Below are positions 2,600 through 63,337 of a stretch of DNA of 64,000 bases, in pieces (positions within the stretch are counted from its first letter, which is position 1; every line of letters begins with the position of its first letter). The position numbers and the translations under genes are program-made. The notes below the pieces were generated by a model that searched no databases, had not been told where the DNA came from, and saw nothing but the letters and a program-made list of their open reading frames with translations. Location: positions 124,001 to 188,000 of IMG/VR virus record IMGVR_UViG_3300042473_001540. One strand, 5' to 3'.

Positions 2600-3904
2600 A
2601 TGAGCATTCGCGCCCACATACAAGATTTTCTTAACCAAGTTGGTAATGAAGAACCCAATTTGTTTCCTTACATGGCCAACTCAGGTGATTTTGAACCTGG
2701 TAAATCCACTGTTTATTATTCTGGTCCCTACTGGGATCAAGATGAAATTGCCGAAATGATGCACAGCATATTGAAGGGCAAATGGTTGAGCAGTGGTGAA
2801 AAGGTTGCTCGCTTTGAAAAGGGTTTTGGCGAAAAGTTCAATCTACCCCATAATGTGATGGTAAACAGCGGGAGCTCGGCCAATCTCGCAATGATTGCAG
2901 CACTGAAAAAGAGTTTTGGGTGGAGTGACGACAGCGAGATTTTGGTTTGTGTGTGTGGCTTCCCCACTACTATTGCTCCCATTGTACAAAACAATCTCAA
3001 GCCAGTTTTTGTGGACATTGACTTCTCTGATCTCAACTGGGATTTGACACAACTGGAGTCAAAAATCACATCAAAAACGGTTGCGGTGTTCAGCAGTCCC
3101 GTGTTGGGCAATCCCTATGACTTTGATAGGATTCAAGAGATTGCAGCCCGGCACAAGCTCCAGCTCATCTCAGACAACTGTGACAGCCTAGGCAGCAAGT
3201 GGCGAGGACAGTATCTCACCGACTTCAGTGTGGCAGCATCTTGTAGCTTTTATCCAGCACACCATCTCTGCACCATGGAAGGCGGTATGGTGAGCAGCAA
3301 GAGTAAAGAGATCGTCACCCTGGCACGGAGCATCAGCTGGTGGGGTCGCGACTGCCATTGTGTGGGGGCACAAAATCTCATTCAGTGTGGCATGTGTGGC
3401 GAGAGGTTCAAAAAGTGGATCCAAGAGTATGACACGGTCATGGACCACAAATATTTGTTCAGCAACATGGGCTATAATCTCAAGCCACTAGACATGCAAG
3501 GTGGAGTTGGCTTAGTTCAGCTGAAAAAATGGGAAAAGATACACGCTCTTCGCCGTATCAACAAAACTCGCATCCAAGATATTTTAGAAACTGTGCCGGG
3601 GGTGCGTGTGGTGAATGAGCGAAGAGAAGCCGAGACCAGTTGGTTCGGTGTGCCTGTGATTTGTGAAAGCAAAGAACAGAAAGAGCACCTTGTGAGCTTC
3701 CTAGAGGGAAATAGGATTCAAACCAGAAATTATTTTGCTGGCAATATCCTAGTGCATCCTGGGTATCGCCATCTCGGTGACTATCGAGATTATTCCAATG
3801 CCAACTTGGTGCTCGACCGCGTGTTTTTCCTGGGTTGCAGTCCCACAATCACAGAGGGTATGTGCGACTACATCGCTTCAGTGGTGCAGCGAGCCACAAG
3901 CTAA
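2600..3904 (+). CDS. rfbH: CDP-4-keto-6-deoxyglucose 3-dehydrase (RfbH/DdhC-like; DegT/DnrJ family)
   Basis: VNSGSSANL; SFYPAHH with His in place of the Schiff-base Lys; GRDCHC...C iron-sulfur Cys motif; YDHKY-like segment. Confidence 0.85.
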   Translation: MSIRAHIQDFLNQVGNEEPNLFPYMANSGDFEPGKSTVYYSGPYWDQDEIAEMMHSILKGKWLSSGEKVARFEKGFGEKFNLPHNVMVNSGSSANLAMIAALKKSFGWSDDSEILVCVCGFPTTIAPIVQNNLKPVFVDIDFSDLNWDLTQLESKITSKTVAVFSSPVLGNPYDFDRIQEIAARHKLQLISDNCDSLGSKWRGQYLTDFSVAASCSFYPAHHLCTMEGGMVSSKSKEIVTLARSISWWGRDCHCVGAQNLIQCGMCGERFKKWIQEYDTVMDHKYLFSNMGYNLKPLDMQGGVGLVQLKKWEKIHALRRINKTRIQDILETVPGVRVVNERREAETSWFGVPVICESKEQKEHLVSFLEGNRIQTRNYFAGNILVHPGYRHLGDYRDYSNANLVLDRVFFLGCSPTITEGMCDYIASVVQRATS

Positions 3905-5228: not shown

Positions 5229-6578
5229 ATGCAAACCGCAGCTGACGTAATTGTTGCACTAGAAGCCACCAACAGTCGGCTGGACAAGGAAGCGATTGTT
5301 GAGCAGGCTTGGAAGCTGGGCATCACAGACTTTTTTAAAGGTGCAATGCTGGCGTTTGATGCGCTCGTGACCTTTGGCATCAAGAAGGTTCCGCTTATTG
5401 ATGATACTGAGCAGGGACCAGCTGCGGGCAGCTACACGTTTGCACACTTCAAAACTCTCGCAGATGCACTGAAGAATCGCAAGCTTACCGGGCATGATGC
5501 TCGTGACGCTGTGTTGGAAGCTGCTGAAAGCTGCAACACGCACGAGTGGAACAATTGGTATAGGCGCGTGCTACTCAAGGACTTCAAGTGCGGCCTGAGT
5601 GAGACCACCATCAACAAGGTGCTAGGCAAGCTCGGCAAAGACGCCAAAGCTTACACTGTGCCAGTGTTCACTTGCCAGCTGGCCAAGGACAGTGACGATC
5701 ACCCCAATGACATGCGGGGCAAGAAGCTGTGCGACTTCAAGCTGGATGGAGCAAGGTTGCTCACTGTGTTGAACAAGGCTACTGGCGAAGTAATCCAATA
5801 CAGCCGGAATGGCCACATCAACAATAACTTCCCTCAACTAACTGAGGCGCTGGCTACACTCTTGCCCCAACTAACTGAAAGCGTTGTGCTGGATGGGGAG
5901 GTTGTGTCTGCCAGCTTTCAGGCTATGATGAAGCAGTTCAAGCGCAAGAAGAACGTTGACACTTCTGATGCACATCTTGCACTGTTTGACATTGTGCCCT
6001 TGAGTGCATTTCTCAAGGGCGAATACAAGGTCTCGCAGCGTGATCGTCACCTCGCACTGTGTGAGCTGGAACCGCTCCTGAAGTCTGCTACCAAGGACCA
6101 GGTCAGTGTTGTGCCCAAGGTGGAAATTGACCTAGACACAGAGGAGGGGCAGGCTCGCCTCAGCGAGTTCAACCGCGAGGCACTTGACAGTGGCGTAGAA
6201 GGAATCATGGTGAAGGATCCCGGGGCTCCTTACAAGTGCAAGCGAAGCTCAAATTGGTTGAAGACAAAACCATTTATTTTTGTAGACCTTGAGGTAACTG
6301 CTGTTGTTCCAGGTAAACCTGGCACCAAGTATGAACACACCATGGGTGCTGTGGAGTTTGGTGGCGAGGATCAAGGACGAGTGATCTCGGTTAGTGTAGG
6401 CAGCGGCTGGAGCGACGAGGATCGTGATGTGATCTGGAAGCACCGGAAAAAGGCAGTTGGGCGTATTGGTGAGATACGAGCAGATCTCATCTCCAAGAGT
6501 GAGAACGGTGACACGTATAGCCTGCGCTTTCCTCGCTTTGAGCGTTGGCGTGGCTGGGCCCCAGGCGAGAAGATCTAA
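5229..6578 (+). CDS. ATP-dependent DNA ligase
   Basis: KLDGAR adenylation motif, VLDGEV, FDIV, EGIMVK, WLKTK, SLRFPRF. Confidence 0.95.
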   Translation: MQTAADVIVALEATNSRLDKEAIVEQAWKLGITDFFKGAMLAFDALVTFGIKKVPLIDDTEQGPAAGSYTFAHFKTLADALKNRKLTGHDARDAVLEAAESCNTHEWNNWYRRVLLKDFKCGLSETTINKVLGKLGKDAKAYTVPVFTCQLAKDSDDHPNDMRGKKLCDFKLDGARLLTVLNKATGEVIQYSRNGHINNNFPQLTEALATLLPQLTESVVLDGEVVSASFQAMMKQFKRKKNVDTSDAHLALFDIVPLSAFLKGEYKVSQRDRHLALCELEPLLKSATKDQVSVVPKVEIDLDTEEGQARLSEFNREALDSGVEGIMVKDPGAPYKCKRSSNWLKTKPFIFVDLEVTAVVPGKPGTKYEHTMGAVEFGGEDQGRVISVSVGSGWSDEDRDVIWKHRKKAVGRIGEIRADLISKSENGDTYSLRFPRFERWRGWAPGEKI

Positions 6579-6838
6579 TGAAGTATGAGAAACTGCCCAA
6601 GAGCCCAGGCTGGATATTTTTCAGCACTGCAACAAATGCCAAGGAAAGGCGTGCTGAGCTCAAGCCCATTATGGTGCTATGCAAGAGTACCCTGGGACGC
6701 AGCCATGGACCCCACAATCAAGGCAGTCGGTGGTATTACTGCCATGCTCGCAGTCCCAACGGCTGGCTCAACAATAGAGACAGTGTGGTGATCGTGGACC
6801 CTGGCGTGGCTGCCCAGGTTATTTTGACATTTTTCTGA
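6578..6838 (+). CDS. hypothetical protein (possible distant member of the small Trp-rich family)
   Basis: ATG overlaps ligase stop (TAATG). Confidence 0.55.
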   Translation: MKYEKLPKSPGWIFFSTATNAKERRAELKPIMVLCKSTLGRSHGPHNQGSRWYYCHARSPNGWLNNRDSVVIVDPGVAAQVILTFF

Positions 6839-6854
6839 AAAAGGAAACCCAGAG

Positions 6855-7253
6855 ATGCTACTAGCTACCCTGCCCAACTTCCTGCTGTATTTTGGCAGCA
6901 GCCTTGTGATGATTGTCATCAGCCTCTACATCTACATCCGGATCACGCCCTATGATGAGATCCAACTCATCCGAGAAGGGAACACAGCCGCAGCACTGAG
7001 TTTTGCTGGCACCCTGCTGGGCATGACAGTAGCTATGGCCTCTGTGATCATCTACAGCACTGGTTGGCTTGACAAGGTCATTTGGTGTGCTGTGGCACTG
7101 GCTATGCAACTCCTAATGTGGGAGATCATGAACTGGGTGTTTGGCAACCTACAGCGCAGTATTGCAGTTGACCGCTGCATGGCTGATGCAATCATGTTGG
7201 GTACCAGCAGCCTGGCTGTTGGTATCCTACAGGCAGCCTGCTTCACCTACTAA
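6855..7253 (+). CDS. DUF350 (YjfL-like) inner-membrane protein
   Basis: Four hydrophobic segments; ITPYDE..LIREGNTAAA signature. Confidence 0.85.
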   Translation: MLLATLPNFLLYFGSSLVMIVISLYIYIRITPYDEIQLIREGNTAAALSFAGTLLGMTVAMASVIIYSTGWLDKVIWCAVALAMQLLMWEIMNWVFGNLQRSIAVDRCMADAIMLGTSSLAVGILQAACFTY

Positions 7254-7255
7254 GC

Positions 7256-7283
7256 TTGACACTTTCCTTAAACCTGCTATAGT
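7256..7283 (+). promoter_or_regulatory. sigma70-type early promoter
   Basis: TTGACA-N16-TATAGT (GC before -10). Confidence 0.6.
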
Positions 7284-7300
7284 CCTCGCAGGAGACACAC

Positions 7301-8017
7301 ATGCGACACAGTCAAAAAATTGCTCTAGTGCTGTTGGGCTCAGTAAGCGCCATCAGCCTCACAGCTTGTGATGACAAGCCCAAGGATGGTGATCCCATCT
7401 ACGAGAGTGCTGACCAATGCAAGAGCATGGGAGGCACAAATTGTGATGATCGCTGGTACAAGGCCATGAGCGATCATGTGTCTACAGCGCCGAAATACAA
7501 TGACGAGCAAAGCTGTATTGCTCGTGGACACGAGCGTTGCACGTCGGTAACTGGACCGGGAAATTCGGGCAACATTTGGCTACCAGCCATGGTTGGCTTC
7601 ATGGCAGGACGCATGACAGCAGATACTCGGCCGGTTTACTTTCAAGGCTACAACAGCCCTACAAATGCCCGAGAGCGCGAAGATCGTCGAGTGATGGCTG
7701 GTGGTTACCACGGCGGCGGTGGGGCCACTACACCAGTTATGGTAGGAAACTACTACGGAGGCGGCTCGAGTTATGACAGCGGGCGCTTGGGCAGTGGCAT
7801 GAACCAGGGCGCAGCCCGCGCTGGATGGAATGTAAAGCCCGCCTCTCCAGGTGCTCCGGCTGCAAGCAGTGCAGGCACAGTGGCCCGGACTATGCCCACC
7901 TCTGTAAGCCGCGCGAGTGTCCCCTCTAGTGGCTCAAGTGCTGTGAGCACCAGCAGTGCTAGCCGCGGTGGATTTGGTGGTAGTGGTGCTGGTATGGGCA
8001 GCTCGGGCGGCGGTTGA
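7301..8017 (+). CDS. DUF1190 (YgiB/YjfM-like) lipoprotein
   Basis: Lipobox LTAC, APKY...C, WLPAMVGF, Gly/Ser tail with SRGGFG. Confidence 0.85.
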   Translation: MRHSQKIALVLLGSVSAISLTACDDKPKDGDPIYESADQCKSMGGTNCDDRWYKAMSDHVSTAPKYNDEQSCIARGHERCTSVTGPGNSGNIWLPAMVGFMAGRMTADTRPVYFQGYNSPTNAREREDRRVMAGGYHGGGGATTPVMVGNYYGGGSSYDSGRLGSGMNQGAARAGWNVKPASPGAPAASSAGTVARTMPTSVSRASVPSSGSSAVSTSSASRGGFGGSGAGMGSSGGG

Positions 8018-8041
8018 CAAACCCAAAAATTCTGCTACAGT
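8014..8041 (+). promoter_or_regulatory. sigma70-type early promoter
   Basis: TTGACA-N16-TACAGT (GC before -10); AAGGAG SD before ATG 8064. Confidence 0.55.
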
Positions 8042-8063
8042 AAGGCTCAGAAGGAGACATCAT

Positions 8064-9215
8064 ATGCGACGTCACACAATGCAGGCCCGTCCCAACTGGC
8101 GCGAGCGTGCCGAGGAAGTGGGCTTCACGTTTCACACAAGTGGCAACCCCAGCACTGGTGGAGATGGCACCTACTGGGACGAGACTGTGGCCTACGAGTT
8201 CACCAGTGCCGAGATTGATGAGCTGGAAGCTGCTACCGAAGAGGTGCATGCTCGCTGCCTCGATGCTGTGGACCGAGTGTTCAATGACCGTGAGCTGATG
8301 ACGCGCATGGGCATCCCAGCTGACTATCACGACTACATCCAGTGGAGTTGGGCACGGAACGACCCATCACTCTATGGGCGATTTGACTTCGCCTATGACG
8401 GCAAGGGTCCGCCCAAGATGCTGGAATACAACGCTGACACGCCCACTATGGTGATTGAGTCGGCTATGATGCAGTGGTTTTGGCTACAGGACGAGCGCCG
8501 TGGCGCAGATCAGTTCAACAGCCTACATGAGCGCCTCGTGGAGCGATTTACTGAGATTCGCGTGCTCATGCCACCGGGTGAGCCCTTTTACTTTGCTGGC
8601 TTTGGGGACAATGAGGAAGAGCGGCAGACTTGTGTGTATCTTCAGGACCTGGCCACACAGGCTGGCCTTGATGCACGCTTCATCAACCTAGGCGACATTG
8701 GCTGGCTCAACAATCAGTTTGTGGACCTGGAAGATCGCCCCATCAAGTATTGGTTCAAGCTGTATCCGTGGGAGTGGATGTTCTCGGATGAGTTTGGCCA
8801 GCACACAAGGAATGATGTCAGCGGCATCATTGAACCCATCTGGAAGTGCATACTGAGCAACAAAGGCATTCTGCCTGTGCTCCACGAGATGTTCCCGGAT
8901 CACCCCAACATTCTGCCTGCCTACTGGACCTCAACAGAAGCTGGTGGCAGCGACTACGTGGCTAAGCCCATGCTCAGCCGTGAGGGTGCCAACATCAGTA
9001 TTGTGAGCAATGGACGCGAGGTAGCGAGCACTGCGGGCAAGTATCACGGGCACCGGATCTACCAACAGCGGGCGCGACTGTTCCAGCAAGATGGCCATCA
9101 TGCTGTGATTGGCAGTTGGGTGGTGGGAGACAAGCCAGCTGGGCTCATCATTCGAGACAGTGCCCGAGAGATTGTGCAGGACACCAGCCGCGTGGTGCCA
9201 CATTGGTTTCTGTGA
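8064..9215 (+). CDS. glutathionylspermidine synthase family ATP-grasp protein (YgiC/YjfC-like)
   Basis: LYGRFDF, LEYNADTPT, FKLYPWEWM, ILSNKG, KP..SREGAN. Confidence 0.92.
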   Translation: MRRHTMQARPNWRERAEEVGFTFHTSGNPSTGGDGTYWDETVAYEFTSAEIDELEAATEEVHARCLDAVDRVFNDRELMTRMGIPADYHDYIQWSWARNDPSLYGRFDFAYDGKGPPKMLEYNADTPTMVIESAMMQWFWLQDERRGADQFNSLHERLVERFTEIRVLMPPGEPFYFAGFGDNEEERQTCVYLQDLATQAGLDARFINLGDIGWLNNQFVDLEDRPIKYWFKLYPWEWMFSDEFGQHTRNDVSGIIEPIWKCILSNKGILPVLHEMFPDHPNILPAYWTSTEAGGSDYVAKPMLSREGANISIVSNGREVASTAGKYHGHRIYQQRARLFQQDGHHAVIGSWVVGDKPAGLIIRDSAREIVQDTSRVVPHWFL

Positions 9216-23948: not shown

Positions 23949-24228
23949 GGCTGCACTCAAAGCAAGGATACATTTTTATAGATCTTTGACTCAAAGATCT
24001 AAATGGATTGTAATGTTTTTTTTGGAGATTTTAGGTACAGCCAGCATACTGCTGGCTGTCGCCGTTTAAGCCTTTCAAATATTACCTTTGAGCACATTGT
24101 ATTTGTTTTGGTTGTTTGGCAGTGTAGCCTTGACCATCAGCAGTATTTTGCGTAAGAATCTATTACTCGCTGTAATGATGTTGTTTTATACAGGGTTGAA
24201 TTTATATGGATTATGGAGTTTTGGATGA
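23938..24228 (+). pseudogene. small 3-TM membrane protein gene interrupted by one in-frame TAA (24067-24069)
   Basis: Frame reads ...MFFLEILGTASILLAVAV*AFQILPLSTLYLFWLFGS...LNLYGLWSFG*; final TGA overlaps the polymerase ATG (ATGA). Confidence 0.7.
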
Positions 24229-26981
24229 CGTATGTTGATGCTATTTTGGAGAAAGACAAACACTGTATTCAAGTTGTGGAGCGTGTAAACCACAAACGAG
24301 TCTACAACACATATCCCAGCAAATACGTAATGTATTTTCCCAGTGAGCGTGGAAAATACACTAGCATTTATGGTGAACGGCTGGATAAATTTGAAACCAA
24401 TCGTTGGGAAGAGTTTCAAAGAGAGTGTCGCTTGGTTCCAAAAACACAACAATATGAAAGTGATAGCAATCCCATTTTCCGTTGTTTTTATGAACATTAC
24501 AAAAATACAGCAAGTCCACAGTTGCATGTGGCGTTTTTTGACTTGGAAACTGATTTTGATCCTGATCGGGGCTTCTCGTCAACTGACGAGGCGTTCAATC
24601 CCATTACAGCAGTATCTGTATATTTGAGTTGGCTGGGCAAAAACTTTACTCTTGTCCTCAAACCCAAAACACTCACAGTAGAGCAAGCATCAGCAGTTGT
24701 GGACAAATTTGAAGACACTGTGCTGTGTAGCAATGAAACTGAGCTATTGGATGTGTTTCTCACCCTCATTGAGGATGCAGATGTTCTCACAGGTTGGAAT
24801 TCAGAGGGTTATGATATTCCCTATTTGCACAATCGTATCATTCAAATTTTGAGTAAGGAGCACACTAAAAGGCTGTGTCTCTGGAACAAATTTCCCAAGA
24901 AAAGGGAGTATGAAAGCTATGGCAAGCCCACTATTACTTTTGATCTAGTGGGCAGAGTCCATCTTGACTATCTGCAACTGTACCGCAAGCATACCTATCA
25001 CGAGATGCACAGTTATCGACTGGACTTTGTGGGCGAGTATGAAGTGGGCGACAAGAAGATAGCTTACGAAGGCAGCTTGGACAAGCTCTATAACGAAGAC
25101 TTTGAAAAGTTCATTGCCTATAACAGGCAAGACGTTATGCTGTTGGTGAAAATTGATCGCAAGCTGAAATTCATTGATCTAAGCAATGATCTAGCACACA
25201 CAAACGGAGTGTTGATCCAAACAACAATGGGGTCAGTACAGCTTATTGACAATGCCATTACTAACGAAGCACATGATCTTGGCTTATGTGTTCCTACTCG
25301 ACGTAGAGACAATCCTGAAATCATGAAAGACGATCAGGGTGAAGACATTGAGCCCAATGGTATTGCTGGTGCATATGTGGCTGACCCAGTTGAAGGCATG
25401 CACAAATGGATTGGCGGTGTAGACATCAACAGTCTATATCCCAGTGCTATTCGAAGTTTGAACATGAGCAAGGAAACAGTAGTGGGGCAAATCCGCCCTG
25501 TGGGTAATGATCGTTTGATTCAACACAGGATGCAAAAGGAAAAACGCACTTTTGCTGACAGTTGGAACGAGATGTTTGGCATTATTGAGTATAACCAAGT
25601 GATGAATAGGGAAATGGTTATGCTGACTGTGGACTTTGAAGACGGCACCACTGTGGAACTCAGTGCTGACGAACTGTATCAATGGATTTTTGAAAATCCC
25701 AAAAAGCAAATGACGCTCAGTGCCAATGGCACTATTTTTGATCTCAACAAGGAAGGTGTGGTACCAGGCTTGCTGGCCCGCTGGTATGGTGAGAGAAAGG
25801 AGTTGCAGGCAGAAGCCAAAGCATGTTTCAAAAAAGCTGATGAAGAACCTAATCCCTCTAAGAAGAGTGAGTATCAAGAAAAAGCTGATTTTTATGACAG
25901 AAGGCAGTTGATTAAGAAAATTTTGCTAAATTCACTTTATGGAGCTATCGGAAATTCTAGCTCATCGTGGTTTGACAACCGTATTGCACAAAGTACTACT
26001 TTAACAGGTAGATGTATCGTCAAACACATGGGTAGTAAGATCAATGAGGTAATATCAGGGAAATATCACTACAAAGGTGATGCTGTCATATATGGCGACA
26101 CCGACAGCATTTATTTTAGCGCATATCCAGTAATGAGCCAGCTTGAAGACTTCAAAAGCTTTGATTGGAGTCGTGAAGCAGTGGTGCAACTGTATGATCA
26201 AGTTGCAGACATCACTAACCAAAGCTTTCCTGGATTTATGAAACAGGCATTCAATGTACCTGAATCCAGGAGTGTGATCAAAGCTGGCCGTGAACTAGTA
26301 GCAAGCCATGGATTGTTCATTACCAAAAAACGGTATGCTGTGATGATCTACGACAAAGAAGGCAAGCGAAAGGATGTAGATGGCAAGCCAGGTGAGATCA
26401 AAGTTATGGGGCTTGATCTCAAGAGAAGTGATACACCAAAACCAGTCCAGGACTTCTTGAGTGAGATTTTAACTTTGGTTTTGACTGAGGTTGACAAAGA
26501 CAGCATTTTCACGCGCATCAAGGAGTTCCGCACAGAGTTCAGCCAATGGCCCAGCTGGGCAAAAGGCAGCCCCAAAAGGGTGAATAACCTTACTCAATAT
26601 GGCATGATTAAGAAAGCTCAGGAAAGCGTTGACCTCAACAAAGACACTGGGAAAAGAAAAACTATTCCGGGCCATGTCCTTGCGAGCCTAAACTGGAACC
26701 TATTGTGTGAGATCTACAACGATTATGGATCAATGCGAATTCAAGACGGGCAAAAGGTGATTGTCTGTAAGCTGAGATCAAACCCTTTGGGTATGACATC
26801 TGTTGCATACCCTGTAGATCAACTGTATCTTCCTGATTGGTTCAAGTCTATGCCTTTTGACAACGCTCTTATGGAGGCCACAATTTTGGACAAGAAACTG
26901 GAAAACTTGTTGGGTGTATTGCACTGGAATCTTGAAGATGCCAAAAACAACGAAACTTTTGACAGCATGTTTAGTTTTTGA
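24225..26981 (+). CDS. family B DNA polymerase (T4 gp43-like)
   Basis: ExoI FFDLET, ExoII GWNSEGYD, ExoIII YNRQDV; DINSLYPS, KILLNSLYG, YGDTDS, KKRY. Confidence 0.97.
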   Translation: MTYVDAILEKDKHCIQVVERVNHKRVYNTYPSKYVMYFPSERGKYTSIYGERLDKFETNRWEEFQRECRLVPKTQQYESDSNPIFRCFYEHYKNTASPQLHVAFFDLETDFDPDRGFSSTDEAFNPITAVSVYLSWLGKNFTLVLKPKTLTVEQASAVVDKFEDTVLCSNETELLDVFLTLIEDADVLTGWNSEGYDIPYLHNRIIQILSKEHTKRLCLWNKFPKKREYESYGKPTITFDLVGRVHLDYLQLYRKHTYHEMHSYRLDFVGEYEVGDKKIAYEGSLDKLYNEDFEKFIAYNRQDVMLLVKIDRKLKFIDLSNDLAHTNGVLIQTTMGSVQLIDNAITNEAHDLGLCVPTRRRDNPEIMKDDQGEDIEPNGIAGAYVADPVEGMHKWIGGVDINSLYPSAIRSLNMSKETVVGQIRPVGNDRLIQHRMQKEKRTFADSWNEMFGIIEYNQVMNREMVMLTVDFEDGTTVELSADELYQWIFENPKKQMTLSANGTIFDLNKEGVVPGLLARWYGERKELQAEAKACFKKADEEPNPSKKSEYQEKADFYDRRQLIKKILLNSLYGAIGNSSSSWFDNRIAQSTTLTGRCIVKHMGSKINEVISGKYHYKGDAVIYGDTDSIYFSAYPVMSQLEDFKSFDWSREAVVQLYDQVADITNQSFPGFMKQAFNVPESRSVIKAGRELVASHGLFITKKRYAVMIYDKEGKRKDVDGKPGEIKVMGLDLKRSDTPKPVQDFLSEILTLVLTEVDKDSIFTRIKEFRTEFSQWPSWAKGSPKRVNNLTQYGMIKKAQESVDLNKDTGKRKTIPGHVLASLNWNLLCEIYNDYGSMRIQDGQKVIVCKLRSNPLGMTSVAYPVDQLYLPDWFKSMPFDNALMEATILDKKLENLLGVLHWNLEDAKNNETFDSMFSF

Positions 26982-27044
26982 AAGGTTGACAACGGAGCTA
27001 TATGTCAAGTAGATTTGACAAAAGTCAACCTTAAGGAATAATTC

Positions 27045-27419
27045 ATGAATATTTTTTCTGCCTTATACGAACGCATACGACGGATGTTTGGGCCTGATCA
27101 AACACCAGTTTCAACTACTCTTGCACCCAGGACAGAACCAATCCAGCCAATAGTTGTGACACCCGCTGGAAATCCTGTGCCACCCAGCTCAGAGAAGGCA
27201 GCCCTTGTAATTGAAAAAGGTGCATACCAACCAATCACGTCTAGTCCAACAGATCCACCAGTGTTGCAGCAACCTGCCCCTGTAATTACTGCCAAACAAG
27301 AGCCATCACAGGAACCTCCCCCAGCTAAAACAGGGAAAAAGCCAAAAGCTACAACAGCCCTTAAGGAACCCAAGGCGCCTAGTCAACGCAAGGCACCAGC
27401 CAAAAAGAAAACTAATTAG
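27045..27419 (+). CDS. Pro/Lys-rich low-complexity hypothetical protein
   Basis: 124-aa ORF, AAGGA SD, basic tail. Confidence 0.65.
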   Translation: MNIFSALYERIRRMFGPDQTPVSTTLAPRTEPIQPIVVTPAGNPVPPSSEKAALVIEKGAYQPITSSPTDPPVLQQPAPVITAKQEPSQEPPPAKTGKKPKATTALKEPKAPSQRKAPAKKKTN

Positions 27420-27428
27420 CCAATTCTA

Positions 27429-28061
27429 GTGAGCCCTCTCTTTGGAACCTCTCTTGAAGAGAGGGCTCAACTCTTACGGTATAAGTCCTACCCTCCAACT
27501 TCACCGGCTTCTTGGAACTCACCAACAAGCACCCCCACTAGCACCTTAGTGTTCGTTACTGGCCATGTGTGTCTAGATTCAGTAGTGGACGACTTTCATG
27601 AAGTCGACAGCATAATTGAAGCTGAAGATTTGCTGTTTTCACAAGCAAACACTGTGGTGGAAAAATACGATGGATTGCCATTTGCACTCCGTAGACAGTC
27701 AACCTTATTAGGGCATCAAAATCGTCGAGGCTGTGGTAATCTCATTTTCACAACTCCGGAGATACGTGCCCAAATACCAGACAATCAACTGTATATTGAT
27801 GACAGCAATTCCTGTAAACAAGTGGGCTGTTGGTACTCAGCAGGCGTGTTGCGCAAATTTGACAAACAAGGCAGTCAAATATTTGTTAGTGATCGGGTAC
27901 CCGAGCACACTGCCTATGTGGCATACAAAGGTTCAAGTGATTTAGACAGCGTTGCACTCCTGTTCAAAAAAGAAGATCAAATGCGACTGTGGTGTCCCTT
28001 AAGAGTTGACATACCCGTGAGCATCGCTCACTATATTACAAAGGTTGTGTTTGACAACTGA
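27429..28061 (+). CDS. truncated paralog of T4 gp23-type major capsid protein (C-terminal part only)
   Basis: VEKYDGL.F...NRRGCGNLIF, AGVL, IFVS...YVAYKGSSDLDS follow the order of gp23 C-terminal motifs. Confidence 0.6.
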   Translation: MSPLFGTSLEERAQLLRYKSYPPTSPASWNSPTSTPTSTLVFVTGHVCLDSVVDDFHEVDSIIEAEDLLFSQANTVVEKYDGLPFALRRQSTLLGHQNRRGCGNLIFTTPEIRAQIPDNQLYIDDSNSCKQVGCWYSAGVLRKFDKQGSQIFVSDRVPEHTAYVAYKGSSDLDSVALLFKKEDQMRLWCPLRVDIPVSIAHYITKVVFDN

Positions 28062-28079
28062 CTCAATTGTGGAAAAATT

Positions 28080-28283
28080 ATGAAATCCCAAAAAACTCGA
28101 ATATATGAGCCTACTGAACTCAAAACTTTATTTGAAGCATTGAACAGTGCACCACCTTGGCTAAGTCGAAGGTTCATACTCAAGAACATGATGGGTTGGA
28201 CTGATGATGATTTGAAACAAAATGCCATCCTGGTTGACGAAGAGACAACACAACGCAAAATGGGTAACAAAGGGAGTTATTGA
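28080..28283 (+). CDS. small protein resembling the C-terminal segment of gp20-type portal protein
   Basis: PWLSRRFILKNMMGWTDDDLKQN...DEE resembles the portal Y.S..F.LK..L..T.EEI..N....EE segment. Confidence 0.45.
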   Translation: MKSQKTRIYEPTELKTLFEALNSAPPWLSRRFILKNMMGWTDDDLKQNAILVDEETTQRKMGNKGSY

Positions 28284-29038
28284 AAATGACAGCAACAGCT
28301 ATTAAGGATGCAATTTCTGATCTTGCAAAGAACGTGATCAGTACTGGCTTTTACGAAAAAATCAAGGTGTCTGGTGGCGCCAAAACCAGCACCATTGAGG
28401 CTATTGACAAAGACAAACAAGTGATTCTCAAGGCTGAAACTTTGCATCCTGTGGACGGCTGGGCTGGAGAATTTGGCCTTGCCAATCTAGGCTTGCTCAA
28501 CAGCATTGTGAATGATTCCGAGTTTGCCCACAAAGACAGCAAGCTTGAACTAGTGCTTACTGAGCGTGAAGGTGTAGACGTTCCCACTGAGATGCACTAC
28601 ACAAACAAGAGCAATAGTTTCATCAATTATCGCTTCCTAGCAAAAAACATGGTCCCAGATCAACCCAAGTACATGGAACCACAGTGGGACGTGAAAATCA
28701 AACCCAGCAAAAGCAACATTCAACAGTTCAATTGGGCTGCTGGCAGTCTCAGCAGCTACGAGCAATACTTCATTCCCAAGACAGTTGATGGTAACCTCAA
28801 GTTTTTCATTGGAGATGAAGGTGCAGCTACTCAACGCGGCGGTGTAGTGTTTGCTACAGGGGTTACGGGCGAGTTTGAAAGCTCACACAAATGGCCTATT
28901 GCTCTTGTATCTGCACTTTTGAAGCTGGTTGATGGTGCTGATGCTGAAATGAGCTTCTCCGTCAAGGGTGCTATTCAGCTCAAGCTCAATACTGGCATTA
29001 CCACATACAAGTATGTGCTGCCAGCAAAGCTGCGCTAA
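28280..29038 (+). CDS. DNA polymerase sliding clamp (gp45-like)
   Basis: ~250 aa, GEFGLANL..L, NYRFL, C-terminal YKYVLPA; replication block context. Confidence 0.7.
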   Translation: MKMTATAIKDAISDLAKNVISTGFYEKIKVSGGAKTSTIEAIDKDKQVILKAETLHPVDGWAGEFGLANLGLLNSIVNDSEFAHKDSKLELVLTEREGVDVPTEMHYTNKSNSFINYRFLAKNMVPDQPKYMEPQWDVKIKPSKSNIQQFNWAAGSLSSYEQYFIPKTVDGNLKFFIGDEGAATQRGGVVFATGVTGEFESSHKWPIALVSALLKLVDGADAEMSFSVKGAIQLKLNTGITTYKYVLPAKLR

Positions 29039-34992: not shown

Positions 34993-35075
34993 TATAAATA
35001 GTCTGCTACATTACGGTAGCAAATTGGTGGAAACACCCGTTGTGCATAAACGACAGATGCTTTGAAAGGAAAGAT
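34993..35075 (+). promoter_or_regulatory. late promoter and structured leader of folE
   Basis: TATAAATA 34993-35000; TGCTAC/GTAGCA stem, GGTG-GAAA-CACC tetraloop, CGTT/AACG stem; AAGGA SD. Confidence 0.5.
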
Positions 35076-35756
35076 ATGAGCTATAATCGCACAAAATGTG
35101 ATCCTGAACTGGGTCGCAAAGTACATGAATACCTAGTTTCCAAAGGGGTTGAAACCCCAACAGTGGAAAATTCCCTAAGCCGCACAGACAAAATTGATAT
35201 TATTGAACGCAAGTTCAAGGACATCATGGAAACAATGGGCTTGAATCTATCAGATGATAGTTTGGCTGAAACGCCGACACGAGTGGCTCGCATGTTTATC
35301 CAGGAACTTTTTTGGGGTCTTGATTGGGAAGCTTTCCCCAAGTGCACCACTGTTGCCAACAAAATGGGCTATGATGAAATGGTGTGTGAACGAAATGTCA
35401 CTGTCAAAAGTGCCTGCGAACATCACTTCATTGTGATTGATGGTGTAGCAACTGTGGCTTATATTCCCAAAGAAAAGGTATTGGGCCTAAGCAAGATCAA
35501 TCGAATTGTCGAATACTTTAGCCGCCGACCACAAATTCAAGAGCGTTTGACTGAGCAGATCTTTCATGCAATGGAATATATCCTGGAAACCGATAGCATT
35601 GCTGTCGTCATTCACGGCAAGCACTATTGCGTAAGTCATCGTGGCGTTGAAGATGATTGCAGCAGCACAGTTACCAGCAAGCTGGGTGGTGCGTTCAAAC
35701 AGGATCCCAGTGCTCGTGCTGAATTTATGAAGATGGTTGACTTGACCTCTCTCTAA
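35076..35756 (+). CDS. folE: GTP cyclohydrolase I
   Basis: ETPTRVARM, SACEHHF, GLSKINR, RPQIQERLT, HYC...RG. Confidence 0.96.
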   Translation: MSYNRTKCDPELGRKVHEYLVSKGVETPTVENSLSRTDKIDIIERKFKDIMETMGLNLSDDSLAETPTRVARMFIQELFWGLDWEAFPKCTTVANKMGYDEMVCERNVTVKSACEHHFIVIDGVATVAYIPKEKVLGLSKINRIVEYFSRRPQIQERLTEQIFHAMEYILETDSIAVVIHGKHYCVSHRGVEDDCSSTVTSKLGGAFKQDPSARAEFMKMVDLTSL

Positions 35757-40207: not shown

Positions 40208-41089
40208 ATGTTTGGACGCAATGAGCTGGTTGGTGAACGTTACTTCAAAAATGCAGAAGATGAACTTTTTGTAACTAGTATTTTCACCACATTTCAGGGA
40301 GAAGGCCCATATCGAGGCGAGCCTGCTGTGTTTGTTAGGCTAGCCAAGTGCAATCTCCAATGTTCATTTTGTGATACTTTCTTTGATGATGGTGATTGGA
40401 TGACAATCCAAGAGATTGACTCCAAAATCGCAAAGAGCATCTCTGACAGCTTCAATGGTAATACCCCTCTTTGGGCTGATGTTGTGTATGGGGGTCCAGG
40501 AAGTGATCCTGTAAAGAAACGCAACATGGTTCTCGTGCTTACTGGCGGTGAGCCCATGCTACAAAAAAACATTGTTCCATTTTTAGAGCATATGAATACC
40601 CAGTTTGCCCGAACGCAAATTGAAAGCAACGGCACTATCGTCCAGAACATTCCTCAGGAAACTACCTTAGTAGTAAGTCCCAAGTGCAGTGAAAAAAATG
40701 GCCGTCCGGTGAAATATCTTGAACCACGAGCAGAAATGCTAGGAAGAGCAGACTGTTTGAAATTTGTAATGAGTGCAGATTCTGATACTCCTTACAATAA
40801 TGTCCCTGACTGGGCACACAACTGGCGGGACCAAACTGGTAAGAAGGTGTTTGTAAGTCCCATGAACATTTACAACCATGAACCGCAGAAAAGCAAGCAA
40901 ATTCGAGCTGAGAAAAATCAAATTAGTCTTGAAGAACGCAGTATTGTGGATGAAGTTGTGAGTTTTTGGACGCCAGGGCTTATCAATATGCAAACTGCTC
41001 AAGCCAATCACGAACACGCTGCTCGTTATTGTGTCCAGAACGGATTCGTCTTTAATATGCAATTGCATTTATTTGGAAGTTACGCCTAA
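40208..41089 (+). CDS. queE: 7-carboxy-7-deazaguanine synthase (radical SAM)
   Basis: IFTTFQGEG...G.PAVFVRL, CNLQCSFCDT, LTGGEP, ESNG, VSPK, QLH. Confidence 0.88.
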   Translation: MFGRNELVGERYFKNAEDELFVTSIFTTFQGEGPYRGEPAVFVRLAKCNLQCSFCDTFFDDGDWMTIQEIDSKIAKSISDSFNGNTPLWADVVYGGPGSDPVKKRNMVLVLTGGEPMLQKNIVPFLEHMNTQFARTQIESNGTIVQNIPQETTLVVSPKCSEKNGRPVKYLEPRAEMLGRADCLKFVMSADSDTPYNNVPDWAHNWRDQTGKKVFVSPMNIYNHEPQKSKQIRAEKNQISLEERSIVDEVVSFWTPGLINMQTAQANHEHAARYCVQNGFVFNMQLHLFGSYA

Positions 41090-53597: not shown

Positions 53598-56500
53598 CTA
53601 CACACCTTTGGCAGTGAGTGCAAGTTCAAGAGCTGTCACACGCTGATTGAGCTGATCGTTGCTTTCAGCCAACTCTTGCACAGCTCGAATCAACACAGGG
53701 AACACGTTAGCTACTGTGGCTTCAAGCTTCTCTGGGTTGTCCTCAAGCACCAAATGCAGCCAGTCTTGTAGATTATATCGATTGCTGACTTCCAGTACTT
53801 CTTGAGCAATAAATCCAGCGCTCTTGACCCCTACTCGGCTGCCATCTCTAGTATTCCATGTGAATTTTACTGGACGTAGATCACGTATCAGCTGCAATCC
53901 CAAAGGAATATCTTCGATGTCAGTTTTGTCTCTAGCATCAGACAAAGCAGTAATAGTAGTTACCTGAGCTCGCAGTGTAGTAATGCTGGAATCACCAAAA
54001 GTTATTGTGTTGTTGCTGGTTGCTGTTGCTCCACTTGCACCGCATCCCAAAAACACGTTGTTACTGCCATTTGTGTTGCTCGTACCTGCTGATCGTCCTA
54101 TTGCAGTGTTGTTTGTGCCATTGGTATTCTGCTGTAGGGCAGCGCCGCCAATTGCTATGTTTGAATTGGTGGTATTGTTCCTTAGAGCACATGCCCCCAA
54201 TGCAATGTTGTCACTGCCACAAAAGTTAGTGCCAAGGGCATCAAAGCCCAGGCCTATATTATTGATACCACTTGTATTAAATTGGAGTGCCCAACAACCA
54301 ACTGCAATGTTATTGCTACCAGTTGTATTGCATCGTAGAGCACAAGCACCGATAGCTGTATTATTACTACCATTTTGGTTGCAACAAAGCGCAGCTAGGC
54401 CAAATGCCATGTTAAATAGCCCAGTGCTGCTGGTATTGGATGTGCCTATTTTATAACTGCTAGTGCAGTCCAAACACGCATATCCACAACAGCCCACAGG
54501 GTTGCCGTTTATAGCAAATCCATTCCCATCTATAGCCAGTCGCAGACAACTGCCAGCAGCAATCAGCACACAAGATACACTGCCTGCTGCTGGTGTTACA
54601 TTGCCAATTACCGTGTTGTTGAACCCAGTTGTGATCAGACTTCCAGCGTTTTGGCCAATTGCTATGTTACATGTTCCAGTGGTGTTGGCAGTCAGCGCAC
54701 CAATACCCAGTGCTATGTTACCAGTCCCAGTAGTATTCTGCTGTAGGGCAGCGCCGCCAATTGCTATGTTTGAATTGGTGGTATTGTTCCTTAGAGCACA
54801 TGCCCCCAATGCAATGTTGTCACAGCCACCAGGGTTAATTCCAAGGGCATCAAAGCCCATGCCTATGTTATTGTTACCACTTGTATTAAATTGGAGTGCT
54901 AAACAACCAACTGCAATGTTGTGACACCCGCTAGTATTGCATCGTAGAGCAGACGCACCGATAGCTGTATTGCTACAACCATTACGGTTGCAACAAAGCG
55001 CAGCTAGGCCAAATGCCATGTTAAATAGCCCAGTGCTGCTGGTATTGGATGTGCCTATTTTATAACTGCTAGTGCAGTCCAAACACGCATATCCACAACA
55101 GCCCACAGGGTTGCCGTTTATAGCAAATCCATTCCCATCTATAGCCAGTCGCAGACAACTGCCAGCAGCAATCAGCACACAAGATACACTGCCTGCTGCT
55201 GGTGTTACATTGCCAATTACCGTGTTGTTGAACCCAGTTGTGATCAGACTTCCAGCGTTTTGGCCAATTGCTATGTTACATGTTCCAGTGGTGTTGGCAG
55301 TCAGCGCACCAATACCCAGTGCTATGTTACCAGTCCCAGTAGTATTCTGCGATAGGGCAAAGTAACCAATTGCTATGTTGCAACCGGTGGTGTTTGAGCA
55401 AAGGGCCAATGCCCCCAATGCTATGTTGTCACTTCCATTCAAGTTAGTGCCTAGGGCATTAACTCCCATGCCTATGTTATTGCAACCTAGTGTGTTGAAT
55501 TGAAGTGCCAAACAACCAATTGCAATATTATGAGACCCGTTCTGGTTGCATCGTAGAGCAGACGCACCGATAGCTGTATTGCTACAACCAGTTAAATTAC
55601 AACAAAGCGCCCCTTGGCCAAATGCCATGTTAAATGTCCCAGCACTGCTGGACATAAATGTGCCTATTTTATAACTGGAAGTGCAGTCCAAACATGCATA
55701 TCCACAGCTACCAATAGATGCTCCATTAACATAAAGCCCAGTTCCGTCTACTCGCAGTCGTTCACATGCGCCAGCACCAATCAATACAGTGCAAACCAAA
55801 CCCCCGGTGCCAGACAAATTGCCAATTACCGTGTTGTTGAACCCAGTGGTTATTAGGGAGCCAGCGTTTTGGCCAATTGCTATGTTACATGTTCCAGTGG
55901 TGTTGGCAGTCAGCGCACCAATACCCAGTGCTATGTTAAATGTGCCATTGGTATTCTGCTGTAGGGCAGCGCCGCCAATTGCTATGTTTGAATTGGTAAG
56001 ATTGTTCCTTAGAGCACATGCCCCCAATGCAATGTTGTCACAGCCACCAGGGTTAATGCCAAGGGCATCAAAGCCCATGCCTATGTTATTGTTACCAGTT
56101 AGGTTTAATTGGAGTGCCAAACAACCAACTGCAATGTTATTGCTACCAGCAGTATTGCATCGTAGAGCAGACGCACCGATAGCTGTATTGCTACTACCAT
56201 TACGGTTGCAACAAAGCGCACCTAGGCCAAATGCCATGTTATATAACCCAGTGCTGCTGGACATAAATGTGCCTATTTTATAACTGCTAGTGCAGTCCAA
56301 AGACGCATATCCACAGCTACCAATAGATGCCCCATTAACATAAAGCCCACTTGAGTCTACTTTCAGTCGTTCACAACTGCCAGCACCAATCAATACAGTG
56401 TTATTCAAACCCGTAGTGCCAGACAAATTGCCAATTATTGTGTTGTTAGATCCAGTTACAACATTTCCAGCTCCTTGGCCAATTGCTATGTTACATGTTC

Positions 56501-62275: not shown

Positions 62276-62305
62276 AATAGGCGGAAGTTATTTCCGCCTA
62301 TTTTT
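62276..62305 (+). terminator. intrinsic terminator overlapping the 3' end of the convergent endonuclease gene
   Basis: AATAGGCGGAA / TTCCGCCTATT plus T-run. Confidence 0.7.
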
Positions 62306-63223: not shown

Positions 63224-63294
63224 GCTGAATGCTCCTTCATAGCGTTTAGAGCGGTCGGAGAGGTTAGAGGCTCGCGGACCGCAATTGTATTTAG
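63224..63294 (-). promoter_or_regulatory. late promoter and structured leader of the endonuclease
   Basis: CTAAATA 63288-63294 (minus); GCGGTC/GACCGC stem 63251-63282. Confidence 0.5.
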
Positions 63295-63337
63295 TGTCAA
63301 TTTTGACACGTACACACATAATTGTACAAACTCTGCT

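What the first reader, a model, noticed from the sequence alone, without database searches (positions are those of the whole stretch)
27429..28283. Adjacent miniature capsid-like and portal-like genes inside the replication block: possible immune decoys
Seen: the 210-aa ORF has VEKYDGLPFALRRQSTLLGHQNRRGCGNLIF...SAGVL...IFVSD...YVAYKGSSDLDS, the motif order of the C-terminal half of gp23-type capsid proteins (EKFKGL.F...TRRG.GN.I...AGVL...VYID...VGYKG...D). The next 67-aa ORF (PWLSRRFILKNMMGWTDDDLKQN...DEE) resembles the gp20 portal C-terminal segment. Both are far too short to be functional and sit between polymerase and clamp, with a TTGACA box at 28005. Established: several defence systems sense capsid or portal proteins (CapRel, Lit, Avs NLR-like ATPases). 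Inference: early-expressed fragments that occupy such sensors, or dominant-negative inhibitors of competing phage assembly.
Basis: partly seen in the sequence, partly recalled or inferred. Interest (0 to 1): 0.68.

Follow-up and report, generated by a model that had tools for sequence, protein, structure and literature searches.

The report
Mini capsid and portal-crown genes
Between the DNA polymerase and sliding-clamp genes of an uncultivated jumbo phage lie two small, conserved genes that are cut-down copies of the major capsid protein and of the portal's inner "crown"; selection keeps them intact, but what they do (decoy, assembly modulator or minor head part) is still unknown.

Summary
The 210-aa ORF (27429-28061) and the 67-aa ORF (28080-28283) are homologous to gp23-type major capsid protein and to the gp20-type portal C-terminal segment (hhalign 96.4%, E=1e-9; 97.4%, E=1e-11). 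They are not relics. Each defines a length-conserved family in related uncultivated jumbo phages (Atu_ph07/Rak2-like). dN/dS is 0.09-0.17, and the start position is conserved.

The 210-aa protein is more than a C-terminal fragment. AlphaFold gives a compact HK97-like fold over its whole length (Z=15 to T4 gp23). A family member aligns to capsid residues 97-400 with the spine helix deleted. It is a miniature capsid protein without propeptide or N-arm.

The 67-aa protein is a three-helix copy of the portal crown. In every relative that has it, it lies directly before the clamp gene.

With an upstream proline-rich basic protein they form a tight operon behind a sigma-70-like promoter, in an insertion hot spot. 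Relatives carry full-length divergent gp23 paralogues at the same place.

Function is untested. A soluble mimic that competes for a partner of capsid or portal is my best guess. "Immune decoy" is neither supported nor excluded, and three relatives with Tat-like signal peptides argue against a purely cytoplasmic role.

The parts
24213..26981 (+). Family B DNA polymerase (gp43-like), upstream context gene
   Evidence: PHROG 262 E=1e-198; Pfam DNA_pol_B and exonuclease domain. 46-47% identical to Atu_ph07 and Phosso polymerases.
26986..27042 (+). Two overlapping sigma-70-like promoter matches in the polymerase-P124 intergenic gap (TTGACA-18-TAGATT and TTGACA-16-AATAAT)
   Evidence: Consensus scan, 10/12 and 11/12 matches. 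The first TTGACA box directly after the polymerase stop is kept in L182, L183 and L184, and a TTGAC box is present in L097, L175, L178 and L181. Consensus match only; no expression data.
27045..27419 (+). P124: small protein with an amphipathic N-terminal helix, a Pro/Thr/Val-rich middle and a Lys-rich tail; first gene of the operon
   Evidence: No family match. The same architecture, but barely alignable sequence, follows the polymerase in L182, L183, L175, L181 and L100. Its stop lies 9 nt before the cap210 start.
27429..28061 (+). cap210: miniature HK97-fold protein derived from gp23-type major capsid protein (GTG start)
   Evidence: See the full report.
28080..28283 (+). por67: stand-alone three-helix homologue of the portal (gp20) C-terminal crown segment
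28286..29038 (+). Sliding clamp (gp45-like); start codon 2 nt after the por67 stop
   Evidence: PHROG 12062 E=1e-40. Aligns with the gene annotated as sliding clamp in Phosso. Junction shown.

Best explanation
What it is (well supported). These are two exapted, independently folding pieces of head proteins, kept as accessory genes in the replication module of an uncultivated Atu_ph07/Rak2-like jumbo phage.

cap210 is a miniature major capsid protein. It begins at the conserved 'QPM-(S/T)-(P/G)' motif at about MCP residue 97. It therefore lacks the N-terminal ~96 MCP residues, which by analogy with T4 gp23 (my knowledge) hold the propeptide and N-arm. It has also lost most of what I read as the P-domain spine helix, and several loops. 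It keeps the A-domain and P-domain core of the HK97 fold.

por67 is a 67-aa three-helix copy of the portal's C-terminal crown segment. It has no clip, stem or wing.

P124, cap210, por67 and the clamp gene are separated by only 9, 18 and 2 nt and sit behind a sigma-70-like promoter right after the polymerase gene.

How it most likely works (inferred, not shown). Neither protein can tile a shell or form a portal ring, yet both are under purifying selection and keep native-like surfaces. I think they act as soluble mimics. Made with the replication proteins, they would occupy a partner that normally binds the real capsid protein or the portal crown. That partner could be a host protein that senses head proteins, or a head-assembly partner such as the scaffolding core of this phage or of a co-infecting relative. 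The identity of the partner is unknown.
For: Homology: hhalign 96.4% with E=1e-9, and 97.4% with E=1.1e-11. Family member P0029 aligns over aa 32-256 to Phosso MCP aa 97-400 with E=5e-18, and MCP ~176-234 is deleted.

Fold: pLDDT 81.6; Z=15.0 to T4 gp23 over model residues 1-210. por67 is three helices and its best matches are gp20.

Real genes:
- Eight length-matched homologues at 46-96% identity, and eleven for por67 at 59-99%.
- A phmmer search of 1.84 billion representatives finds 15 proteins, 14 of them 101-262 aa and none a full-length capsid protein.
- dN/dS is 0.09-0.16 for cap210 and 0.09-0.17 for por67, except 0.73 in one pair with only four differences. The clamp is at about 0.04.
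- The start codon position is conserved, GTG here and ATG in relatives.

Accessory character:
- cap210 is absent from L097 and L100, which keep por67.
- dN of cap210 is about 0.20 against about 0.05 for the clamp.
- The polymerase-clamp junction holds varied cargo in dozens of relatives.

Timing: a sigma-70-like promoter lies upstream, and no T4-type late box TATAAATA is nearby.

Missing parts: the family lacks the capsid protein's first ~96 residues and the region I read as the spine helix. The window holds no full-length capsid or portal gene.
Against: - There is no expression, interaction or phenotype data; 'mimic' is inferred from anatomy alone.
- Relatives L175 and L178 carry one or two full-length divergent gp23 paralogues at the same locus. 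The locus could therefore be a head-gene outpost and cap210 a minor head part.
- Three family members (P0024, P0026, P0029) have Tat-like signal peptides immediately or shortly before the conserved SP(L/I)(F/L) motif. This suggests export and fits a cytoplasmic competitor poorly.
- por67's fixed coupling to the clamp gene hints at a replication-linked or late-transcription-linked role.
- The first ~60 residues of the cap210 model have low confidence (pLDDT 51-79).
- The phage's own capsid and portal genes were not recovered, so no comparison with them was possible.
Confidence: 0.4

Rival explanations
1. They are minor structural or assembly parts of the phage's own head. cap210 would be a special capsomer, vertex, plug or decoration subunit. 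por67 would be an accessory piece that binds at or replaces part of the portal crown. The locus is then a displaced head-gene cluster.
For: - L175 has a 438-aa gp23 paralogue, and L178 has two (377 and 417 aa), directly upstream of the cap210 homologue. All three are only ~30-32% identical to Atu_ph07 MCP, whereas the capsid proteins of related phages are 60-75% identical to it.
- The arrangement resembles T4's gp23/gp24 pair.
- The HK97 core is kept over the whole length.
- In GAP32 the capsid gene lies 4 kb from the polymerase gene.
Against: - cap210 lacks the capsid protein's N-terminal ~96 residues and the region I read as the spine helix, and most of its E-loop region is poorly modelled. 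In HK97-type shells these elements link subunits (established knowledge).
- It is absent from L097 and L100, two of the closest relatives by polymerase identity.
- It evolves about four times faster than the clamp in dN.
- A sigma-70-like promoter is present and no late-type box is nearby.
- Some members carry Tat-like signals.
Confidence: 0.25
2. They are specifically immune decoys. Early-made cap210 and por67 would bind and block host sensors of capsid or portal proteins (CapRel-, Avs- or CBASS-type sensing) without triggering them. This is the narrow form of the first reader's idea and a special case of the best explanation.
For: - Small, fast-evolving, patchily distributed genes in an insertion hot spot under a sigma-70-like promoter.
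- A gene with a Gad2 (anti-Gabija) Pfam hit lies about 8 kb downstream in relatives L175 and L178.
- Host sensing of capsid and portal proteins is documented (PMC13728456, read).
Against: - No sensor is known for this host and no binding data exist.
- por67 is only the crown helices, a small part of the portal.
- cap210 lacks the N-terminal region that holds the Gol peptide sensed by Lit in T4 gp23 (my knowledge).
- Tat-like signals in three relatives.
- Two full-text searches and one recent review of phage countermeasures turned up no phage-encoded capsid or portal decoy.
Confidence: 0.15
3. por67 is a replication or late-transcription accessory factor that works with the sliding clamp, and its likeness to the portal crown reflects a shared small helical domain rather than head function. 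cap210 would then be unrelated cargo.
For: In all thirteen loci or contigs examined that carry a por67 gene (window, L184, L182, L183, the P0002 contig, L175, L176, L177, L178, L181, the ERZ1426845 contig, L100, L097) it is the gene directly before the clamp. The spacing is 0-5 nt in most and about 80 nt in L100, while other genes come and go.
Against: - The complex prediction of por67 with a clamp trimer gave no answer, which is not evidence either way.
- por67 has no obvious clamp-binding C-terminal motif like the polymerase's ...FDSMFSF.
- Gene adjacency alone is weak evidence.
Confidence: 0.12
4. They are decaying relics of a rearranged head-gene cluster, or the similarity is due to chance.
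For: The single-sequence Pfam hits are below the curated cut-offs. cap210 starts with GTG and has no Shine-Dalgarno sequence.
Against: - Length-conserved families down to about 30% identity.
- dN/dS 0.09-0.17.
- A conserved start position, ATG in relatives.
- A confident compact fold.
- Significant profile-profile matches.
Confidence: 0.02

Closest known systems
T4 gp23 major capsid protein and gp24 vertex protein (Pfam PF07068, HK97 fold)
   Same: Sequence-profile homology and predicted fold. The motifs RQ..RRG.GN, YKG...D and the N-terminal SP..(L/F) strand correspond to gp23-type motifs. Like gp24, it is a paralogue of the major capsid protein.
   Different: About half the size of the related capsid proteins (210 against ~400-520 aa). 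It lacks the capsid protein's N-terminal ~96 residues, and the region I read as the spine helix is largely deleted. It is encoded in the replication module. It is a family of its own: 14 of the 15 hits among 1.84 billion representatives are 101-262 aa. The window protein scores below the Pfam gathering cut-off.
T4 gp20 portal protein (Pfam PF07230), C-terminal crown domain
   Same: por67 aa 15-61 align to portal 475-520 of ~588 (T4 gp20 479-513 of 524). Three helices are predicted, and the best structural matches are gp20.
   Different: It is only the crown segment. It has no clip, stem or wing, so it cannot form a portal ring or a DNA channel. It is a separate gene lying directly before the clamp gene.
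Satellite-encoded capsid-protein homologues that redirect helper capsid assembly (for example SaPIbov5 Ccm); recalled from my own knowledge, not checked here
   Same: A capsid-protein homologue used for something other than building the element's main shell. This is a precedent for capsid mimics that interfere with assembly.
   Different: Those are full HK97-fold proteins that co-assemble into shells and are encoded by satellites. cap210 is strongly reduced and encoded by the phage itself. No assembly effect is shown.
Anti-defence proteins that compete with a structural-protein trigger (for example DSAD1 against DSR2, which senses the tail tube; PMC11087589, abstract seen)
   Same: The concept is the same: a phage protein occupies a sensor that recognises a virion protein.
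   Different: From the abstract alone there is no sign that DSAD1 is a copy of the trigger (I did not check). For cap210 and por67 no sensor or binding is known.
Encapsulin shell proteins
   Same: Small HK97-fold proteins outside a virion context; structural matches at Z about 9-10.
   Different: Those matches are well below the gp23 match (Z 15). The encapsulin chains matched were 228-275 residues long and keep the elements needed for shell formation. There is no cargo gene context here.

Membership tests
Gp23-type major capsid protein (PF07068) | Scores above Pfam's gathering cut-off | tested here: not met
   20.1 bits against a cut-off of 24.4 for the window protein. All 9 family members hit Gp23 and nothing else, best E=2.5e-5. 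Some homologues carry a precomputed PF07068 hit.
Gp23-type major capsid protein (PF07068) | Homology detectable by profile-profile comparison or through intermediate sequences | tested here: met
   hhalign 96.4%, E=1e-9. P0029 against Phosso MCP E=5e-18 over MCP 97-400.
Gp23-type major capsid protein (PF07068) | HK97 fold | tested here: met
   AF2 model with pLDDT 81.6; VIA-align Z=15.0 to T4 gp23, 184 of 210 residues aligned, rmsd 4.0. The first ~60 residues are of low confidence.
Gp23-type major capsid protein (PF07068) | Complete subunit with propeptide, N-arm, full E-loop and spine helix, as needed to tile a shell | tested here: not met
   The protein starts at MCP residue ~97, and MCP ~176-234 is deleted in the family. 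Length is 210 aa against ~400 in related phages.
Gp23-type major capsid protein (PF07068) | Present in virions and forms capsomers | not testable with these tools
   Uncultivated phage. No cultured phage carries a family member.
T4-like portal protein (PF07230) | Scores above Pfam's gathering cut-off | tested here: not met
   15.2 bits against 22.9. 10 of 14 family members hit Portal_T4 only, best E=0.0027.
T4-like portal protein (PF07230) | Homology of the C-terminal crown segment | tested here: met
   hhalign 97.4%, E=1.1e-11. L175 homologue against Atu_ph07 portal: 51% over 39 aa, E=8e-9 in a comparison against seven sequences. The best PDB sequence and fold matches are T4 gp20.
T4-like portal protein (PF07230) | Clip, stem and wing domains forming a dodecameric channel | tested here: not met
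   67 aa in all; only portal residues ~475-520 are represented.
Phage anti-defence decoy or mimic | Binds and neutralises a host sensor | not testable with these tools
   No host or sensor is known.
Phage anti-defence decoy or mimic | Early expression | tested here: inconclusive
   A sigma-70-like promoter lies upstream of the operon and TTGACA is enriched on the coding strand: 60 observed, about 19 expected. These are consensus matches only.
Phage anti-defence decoy or mimic | Accessory, patchy, fast-evolving gene in a variable region | tested here: met
   The polymerase-clamp gap is a cargo hot spot. cap210 is absent in L097 and L100. dN is about 0.20 against 0.05 for the clamp. This feature is not specific to anti-defence genes.

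The most novel reading that the evidence does not exclude
Jumbo phages have turned their own capsid protein and portal crown into small soluble mimics. Made with the replication proteins, these would neutralise host receptors that sense conserved head proteins, or poison the head assembly of co-infecting rivals. This would be the first case of a phage using reduced copies of its own structural 'patterns' as decoys.
Probability: 0.15. Interest if true: 0.85.

Novelty: new variant of a known kind. Interest (0 to 1): 0.6.

Why it matters
Capsid-protein paralogues such as gp24 are known. A conserved family of ~200-260-aa HK97-fold proteins with no N-terminal propeptide/N-arm region and a largely deleted spine-helix region would be, as far as I know, among the smallest derivatives of this fold. 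I found no description of it, nor of a free-standing portal crown domain, in the libraries and full-text searches used here.

The two genes show that head proteins can be pared down to stable cores and reused. They give two small, expressible proteins with which to test whether phages use copies of their own conserved structural proteins against host sensors or competitors.

If they are only minor head parts, they still bear on how very large capsids are built.

Tried and rejected
- **por67 with clamp.** A complex prediction of por67 with a clamp trimer gave the verdict "no answer" (score 0.00). This is not evidence for or against binding.
- **The phage's own capsid and portal genes.** The window has none. 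The claim that full-length copies exist elsewhere in the genome is therefore unverified.
- **Phosso's gene in the same gap.** Phosso's 93-aa ORF between polymerase and clamp is unrelated to all three small ORFs.
- **Nucleotide relatives.** Megablast of the region against cultured phages found nothing.
- **Family libraries.** NCBIfam has no match. PHROGs gives only weak major-head and portal hits.
- **Cultured phages.** Family member P0022 has no tblastn match in cultured phages. P0029 matches only their full-length capsid genes.
- **Loss of P124 in L184.** Rejected: that stretch is a run of N.
- **TTGACA at 28006 and 28051 as promoters for por67.** Rejected. The spacing to a -10 box, or to the ATG, is wrong. 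The 28051 box lies in the codons for the conserved VFDN end of cap210.
- **Literature.** Searches for capsid or portal decoys found no precedent.

Full report
**Context.** The window comes from an uncultivated jumbo phage.
- Its family B DNA polymerase (24213-26981) is 46-47% identical to those of Agrobacterium phage Atu_ph07 and Sinorhizobium phage Phosso, and about 42% identical to Rak2-like phages such as GAP32.
- There is no nucleotide-level relative among cultured phages.
- IMG/VR holds eight near-identical contigs, the longest 328 kb.
- The local gene order is polymerase, a 124-aa proline-rich ORF (P124, 27045-27419), the 210-aa ORF (cap210, 27429-28061, GTG start), the 67-aa ORF (por67, 28080-28283), then the sliding clamp (28286-29038).
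- Next come a CYTH-like gene, a metallophosphoesterase and glycosyltransferases.

**The observation.** The quoted motifs are present.
- On their own the two proteins give only sub-threshold Pfam hits: Gp23 at E=4.7e-4 and Portal_T4 at E=0.009. tblastn hits to capsid, vertex and portal genes are weak but one-sided.
- Pairwise against Atu_ph07, por67 matches portal residues 478-523 (E=1e-6) and cap210 matches MCP 234-347 (E=0.001).
- Once the families were collected the signal became significant. The cap210 family against jumbo-phage capsid proteins gives hhalign 96.4%, E=1e-9. The por67 family against portals gives 97.4%, E=1.1e-11.
- T4 gp23 and gp20 are the top solved-structure sequence hits.

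**Both are real, selected genes.**
- The 5.8-billion-protein search returned eight cap210 homologues of 170-211 aa at 46-96% identity, and eleven por67 homologues of 64-69 aa at 59-99%.
- An exhaustive phmmer search of 1.84 billion representatives found 15 proteins. Fourteen are 101-262 aa. The weakest hit is an 1816-aa protein matched only in short stretches, which I did not follow up. No full-length capsid protein reached E≤0.001.
- Conservation runs over the whole length, including the N-terminal M-x-SPLFG...AQLLRYK motif.
- The window's GTG start sits where L184 has ATG, and one codon after the ATG of L182 and L183.
- Nei-Gojobori dN/dS against three relatives is 0.09-0.16 for cap210. For por67 it is 0.09-0.17, apart from 0.73 in one pair with only four differences. 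The clamp is at about 0.04 and the polymerase C-terminal part at 0.02-0.09.
- cap210 nevertheless evolves fast: dN is about 0.20 against about 0.05 for the clamp.
- These results reject the relic reading.

**What cap210 is.**
- AlphaFold2 on the 18-member alignment gives pLDDT 81.6 and pTM 0.80. Confidence is high for residues 61-210 and low (51-79) for the first 60.
- All top Foldseek hits are HK97-fold capsid proteins, headed by T4 gp23 (E=1.3e-5).
- VIA-align gives Z=15.0, rmsd 4.0 and 184 aligned residues, with model residues 1-210 spanning gp23 107-520. HK97 gp5 and the encapsulins score Z about 9-10.
- Family member P0029 gives independent support. It aligns over aa 32-256 to Phosso MCP aa 97-400 (E=5e-18). 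MCP ~176-234, which I read as the spine-helix region, is deleted, and loops near the C-terminus are trimmed.
- The N-terminal motif of the family therefore corresponds to the MCP motif QPM-TGP...LRVRY.
- cap210 is thus a whole but pared-down HK97 core. It lacks the first ~96 MCP residues, where T4 gp23 has its propeptide and N-arm (my knowledge).
- Family members are closer to the conserved capsid proteins of related jumbo phages than to the divergent full-length paralogues described below.
- BFVD contains other short HK97-like viral proteins, unnamed in the tables at hand, including a 149-aa protein of Sinorhizobium phage phiN3.

**What por67 is.**
- It is a three-helix protein (helices 11-23, 30-37 and 42-62; pLDDT 79).
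- Its seven best Foldseek matches are T4 gp20 chains, with rmsd about 2 Å over 44-45 columns in four of them and about 5 Å in the other three. Probability is 0.77-0.91 for six and 0.35 for one, and E is only 0.4-2.2.
- It corresponds to portal residues 475-520 of ~588, or T4 gp20 479-513 of 524, which is the crown at the inner end of the portal.

**Synteny.**
- Among 80 polymerase-bearing relatives, most have either about 60 nt between polymerase and clamp or about 1 kb, and the rest range from about 120 nt to 2.2 kb.
- The longer gaps carry varied cargo: a methyltransferase family in 21 loci, Thg1, a nucleotide-sugar epimerase, UDP-glucose dehydrogenase, radical SAM, an exonuclease, an HhH-GPD glycosylase and an endolysin. 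The junction is therefore an insertion hot spot.
- por67 is found only in the window's sub-clade. There it is the gene directly before the clamp in all thirteen por67-bearing loci or contigs examined. Spacing is 0-5 nt in most and about 80 nt in L100.
- cap210 is missing from L097 (polymerase, por, clamp) and from L100 (polymerase, 109-aa Pro-rich ORF, Thg1, por, clamp).
- L175 reads: polymerase, 438-aa gp23 paralogue, 92-aa Pro-rich ORF, cap220, Thg1, por66, clamp.
- L178 reads: polymerase with an intein, two gp23 paralogues (377 and 417 aa), cap218, Thg1, por64, clamp.
- These full-length paralogues are only 30-32% identical to Atu_ph07 MCP. The capsid proteins of related phages are 60-75% identical to it. 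They are probably not the main capsid protein and may be gp24-like.

**Expression signals.**
- Two sigma-70-like matches fill the polymerase-P124 gap: TTGACA-18-TAGATT and TTGACA-16-AATAAT.
- The first TTGACA box directly follows the polymerase stop in the close relatives, and a TTGAC box occurs there in more distant ones.
- TTGACA is three times over-represented on the coding strand. Several genes are preceded by a TTGACA box followed by a -10-like (G)CT(A/G)TAGT motif.
- The T4-type late box TATAAATA occurs only three times in the window and never near this locus.
- The intergenic gaps of 9, 18 and 2 nt suggest translational coupling from P124 through to the clamp.
- All of this rests on consensus matches, not on measured expression.

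**Interpretation.**
- Shown: homology, a compact fold, purifying selection, accessory distribution and operon structure.
- Inferred: function.
- Both proteins keep native-like cores but lack what is needed to polymerise. They sit with replication genes behind a host-type promoter. The most economical mechanism is competition for a partner of the real capsid protein or portal crown (confidence about 0.4).
- The main rival is a minor structural or assembly role (about 0.25). The neighbouring full-length gp23 paralogues in L175 and L178 favour it.
- A clamp-linked role for por67 is possible (about 0.12). The one complex prediction gave no answer.
- One awkward fact applies to any cytoplasmic model. 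Three family members (P0024, P0026, P0029) carry N-terminal (T/K)-R-R-x-(hydrophobic)-L signals followed by hydrophobic stretches, and two of them end in Ala-x-Ala-like sites. These lie immediately or shortly before the conserved SP(L/I)(F/L) motif, as Tat export signals do. P0029 lies on a 138-kb phage-like contig in a different context.

**Novelty.**
- No library names either family.
- No cultured phage in the collection searched has a cap210-family gene.
- Literature searches found no description of capsid or portal decoys or of miniature capsid paralogues.
- I rate it a new variant of a known kind (head-protein paralogues), of moderate to good interest. Interest would be high if the decoy or interference function were shown.

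**Limits.**
- The phage's own capsid and portal genes were not recovered.
- The N-terminal third of the cap210 model is uncertain.
- The promoter calls are consensus matches.
- The dN/dS values rest on three relatives, and dS is saturated in the deeper pairs.

Noticed in passing
window 26981-28286; loci L097-L174: The polymerase-clamp junction is an insertion hot spot in this jumbo-phage group. Most relatives have either about 60 nt or about 1 kb there, others up to 2.2 kb. Cargo includes a methyltransferase family (21 loci), Thg1, an epimerase, UDP-glucose dehydrogenase, radical SAM, an exonuclease, an HhH-GPD glycosylase and an endolysin.
   Followed up: partly
window 27045-27419; L182:4995-5339, L183:4989-5339, L175:8226-8504, L181:649-960, L100:10876-11202: A small protein with a conserved architecture but hypervariable sequence follows the polymerase: an amphipathic N-terminal helix, a Pro/Val/Thr-rich middle and a Lys-rich tail. 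Similar N-terminal helices and basic tails flank the HK97 body of two of the full-length gp23 paralogues (L175 438 aa, L178 417 aa). L181's 103-aa protein shares 61% identity over 23 aa with the N-terminus of the L175 paralogue. It could be a capsid-targeting or DNA-binding module, or a body-less remnant of a paralogue.
   Followed up: partly
L175:6871-8187; L178:5261-6394 and 6420-7673: Full-length but divergent gp23-family paralogues (30-32% identical to Atu_ph07 MCP) lie between polymerase and clamp in relatives. They may be gp24-like vertex proteins, and L178 has two in tandem.
   Followed up: partly
proteins P0024, P0026, P0029 (loci L180, L186, L185:10001-10789): Three cap210-family members have twin-arginine (Tat)-like signal peptides immediately or shortly before the conserved SP(L/I)(F/L) motif. 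P0029 lies on a 138-kb phage-like contig near T4-type RNA ligase and NUDIX genes, not next to a polymerase. No signal-peptide predictor was available.
   Followed up: partly
window, + strand, e.g. 3913, 5175, 7256, 8014, 41972: A recurrent promoter-like motif, a TTGACA box followed by a -10-like (G)CT(A/G)TAGT, lies 45-93 nt upstream of four gene starts (a fifth copy at 41972 is 672 nt from the next ORF). TTGACA occurs 60 times on the + strand, 28 on the - strand, with about 19 expected. These are probably the phage's host-RNA-polymerase promoters.
   Followed up: partly
L184:818-5181; L178:1504-5193; L099 and L100 polymerase match; L002 (Atu_ph07): The polymerase gene is interrupted in several relatives. 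L184 has an inserted 395-aa ORF, L178 has an intein, L099 and L100 have an ~860-nt insertion, and Atu_ph07 has two polymerase ORFs. The window's polymerase is uninterrupted.
   Followed up: no
window 61002-62264 (+) and 62288-63319 (-): Two homing-endonuclease-like genes: HNH (PHROG 1314) and a NUMOD3-repeat protein.
   Followed up: no
window 35040-35756, 40208-41089, 7956-9215, 2600-3904: Auxiliary genes: GTP cyclohydrolase I and a QueE-like radical SAM enzyme (from my knowledge, this suggests 7-deazaguanine base modification), glutathionylspermidine synthase and an aminotransferase.
   Followed up: no
window 53598-60728 (-): A very large ORF of 2376 aa on the minus strand, next to glycosyltransferase and carbamoyltransferase genes. 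It was not analysed.
   Followed up: no
L175:18313-18915; L178:15974-16322: A gene with a Pfam Gad2 (anti-Gabija) hit lies about 8 kb downstream of the clamp in two relatives. Whether the window has an equivalent was not checked.
   Followed up: no
BFVD entries A0A345MM67, A0A345MM72, A0A0F6YPW4 (Sinorhizobium phage phiN3), A8WEB5: Other short (149-328 aa) viral proteins have predicted structures resembling the cap210 model, best E=4e-11 and TM 0.69. Reduced HK97-like paralogues may be more widespread than this family.
   Followed up: no
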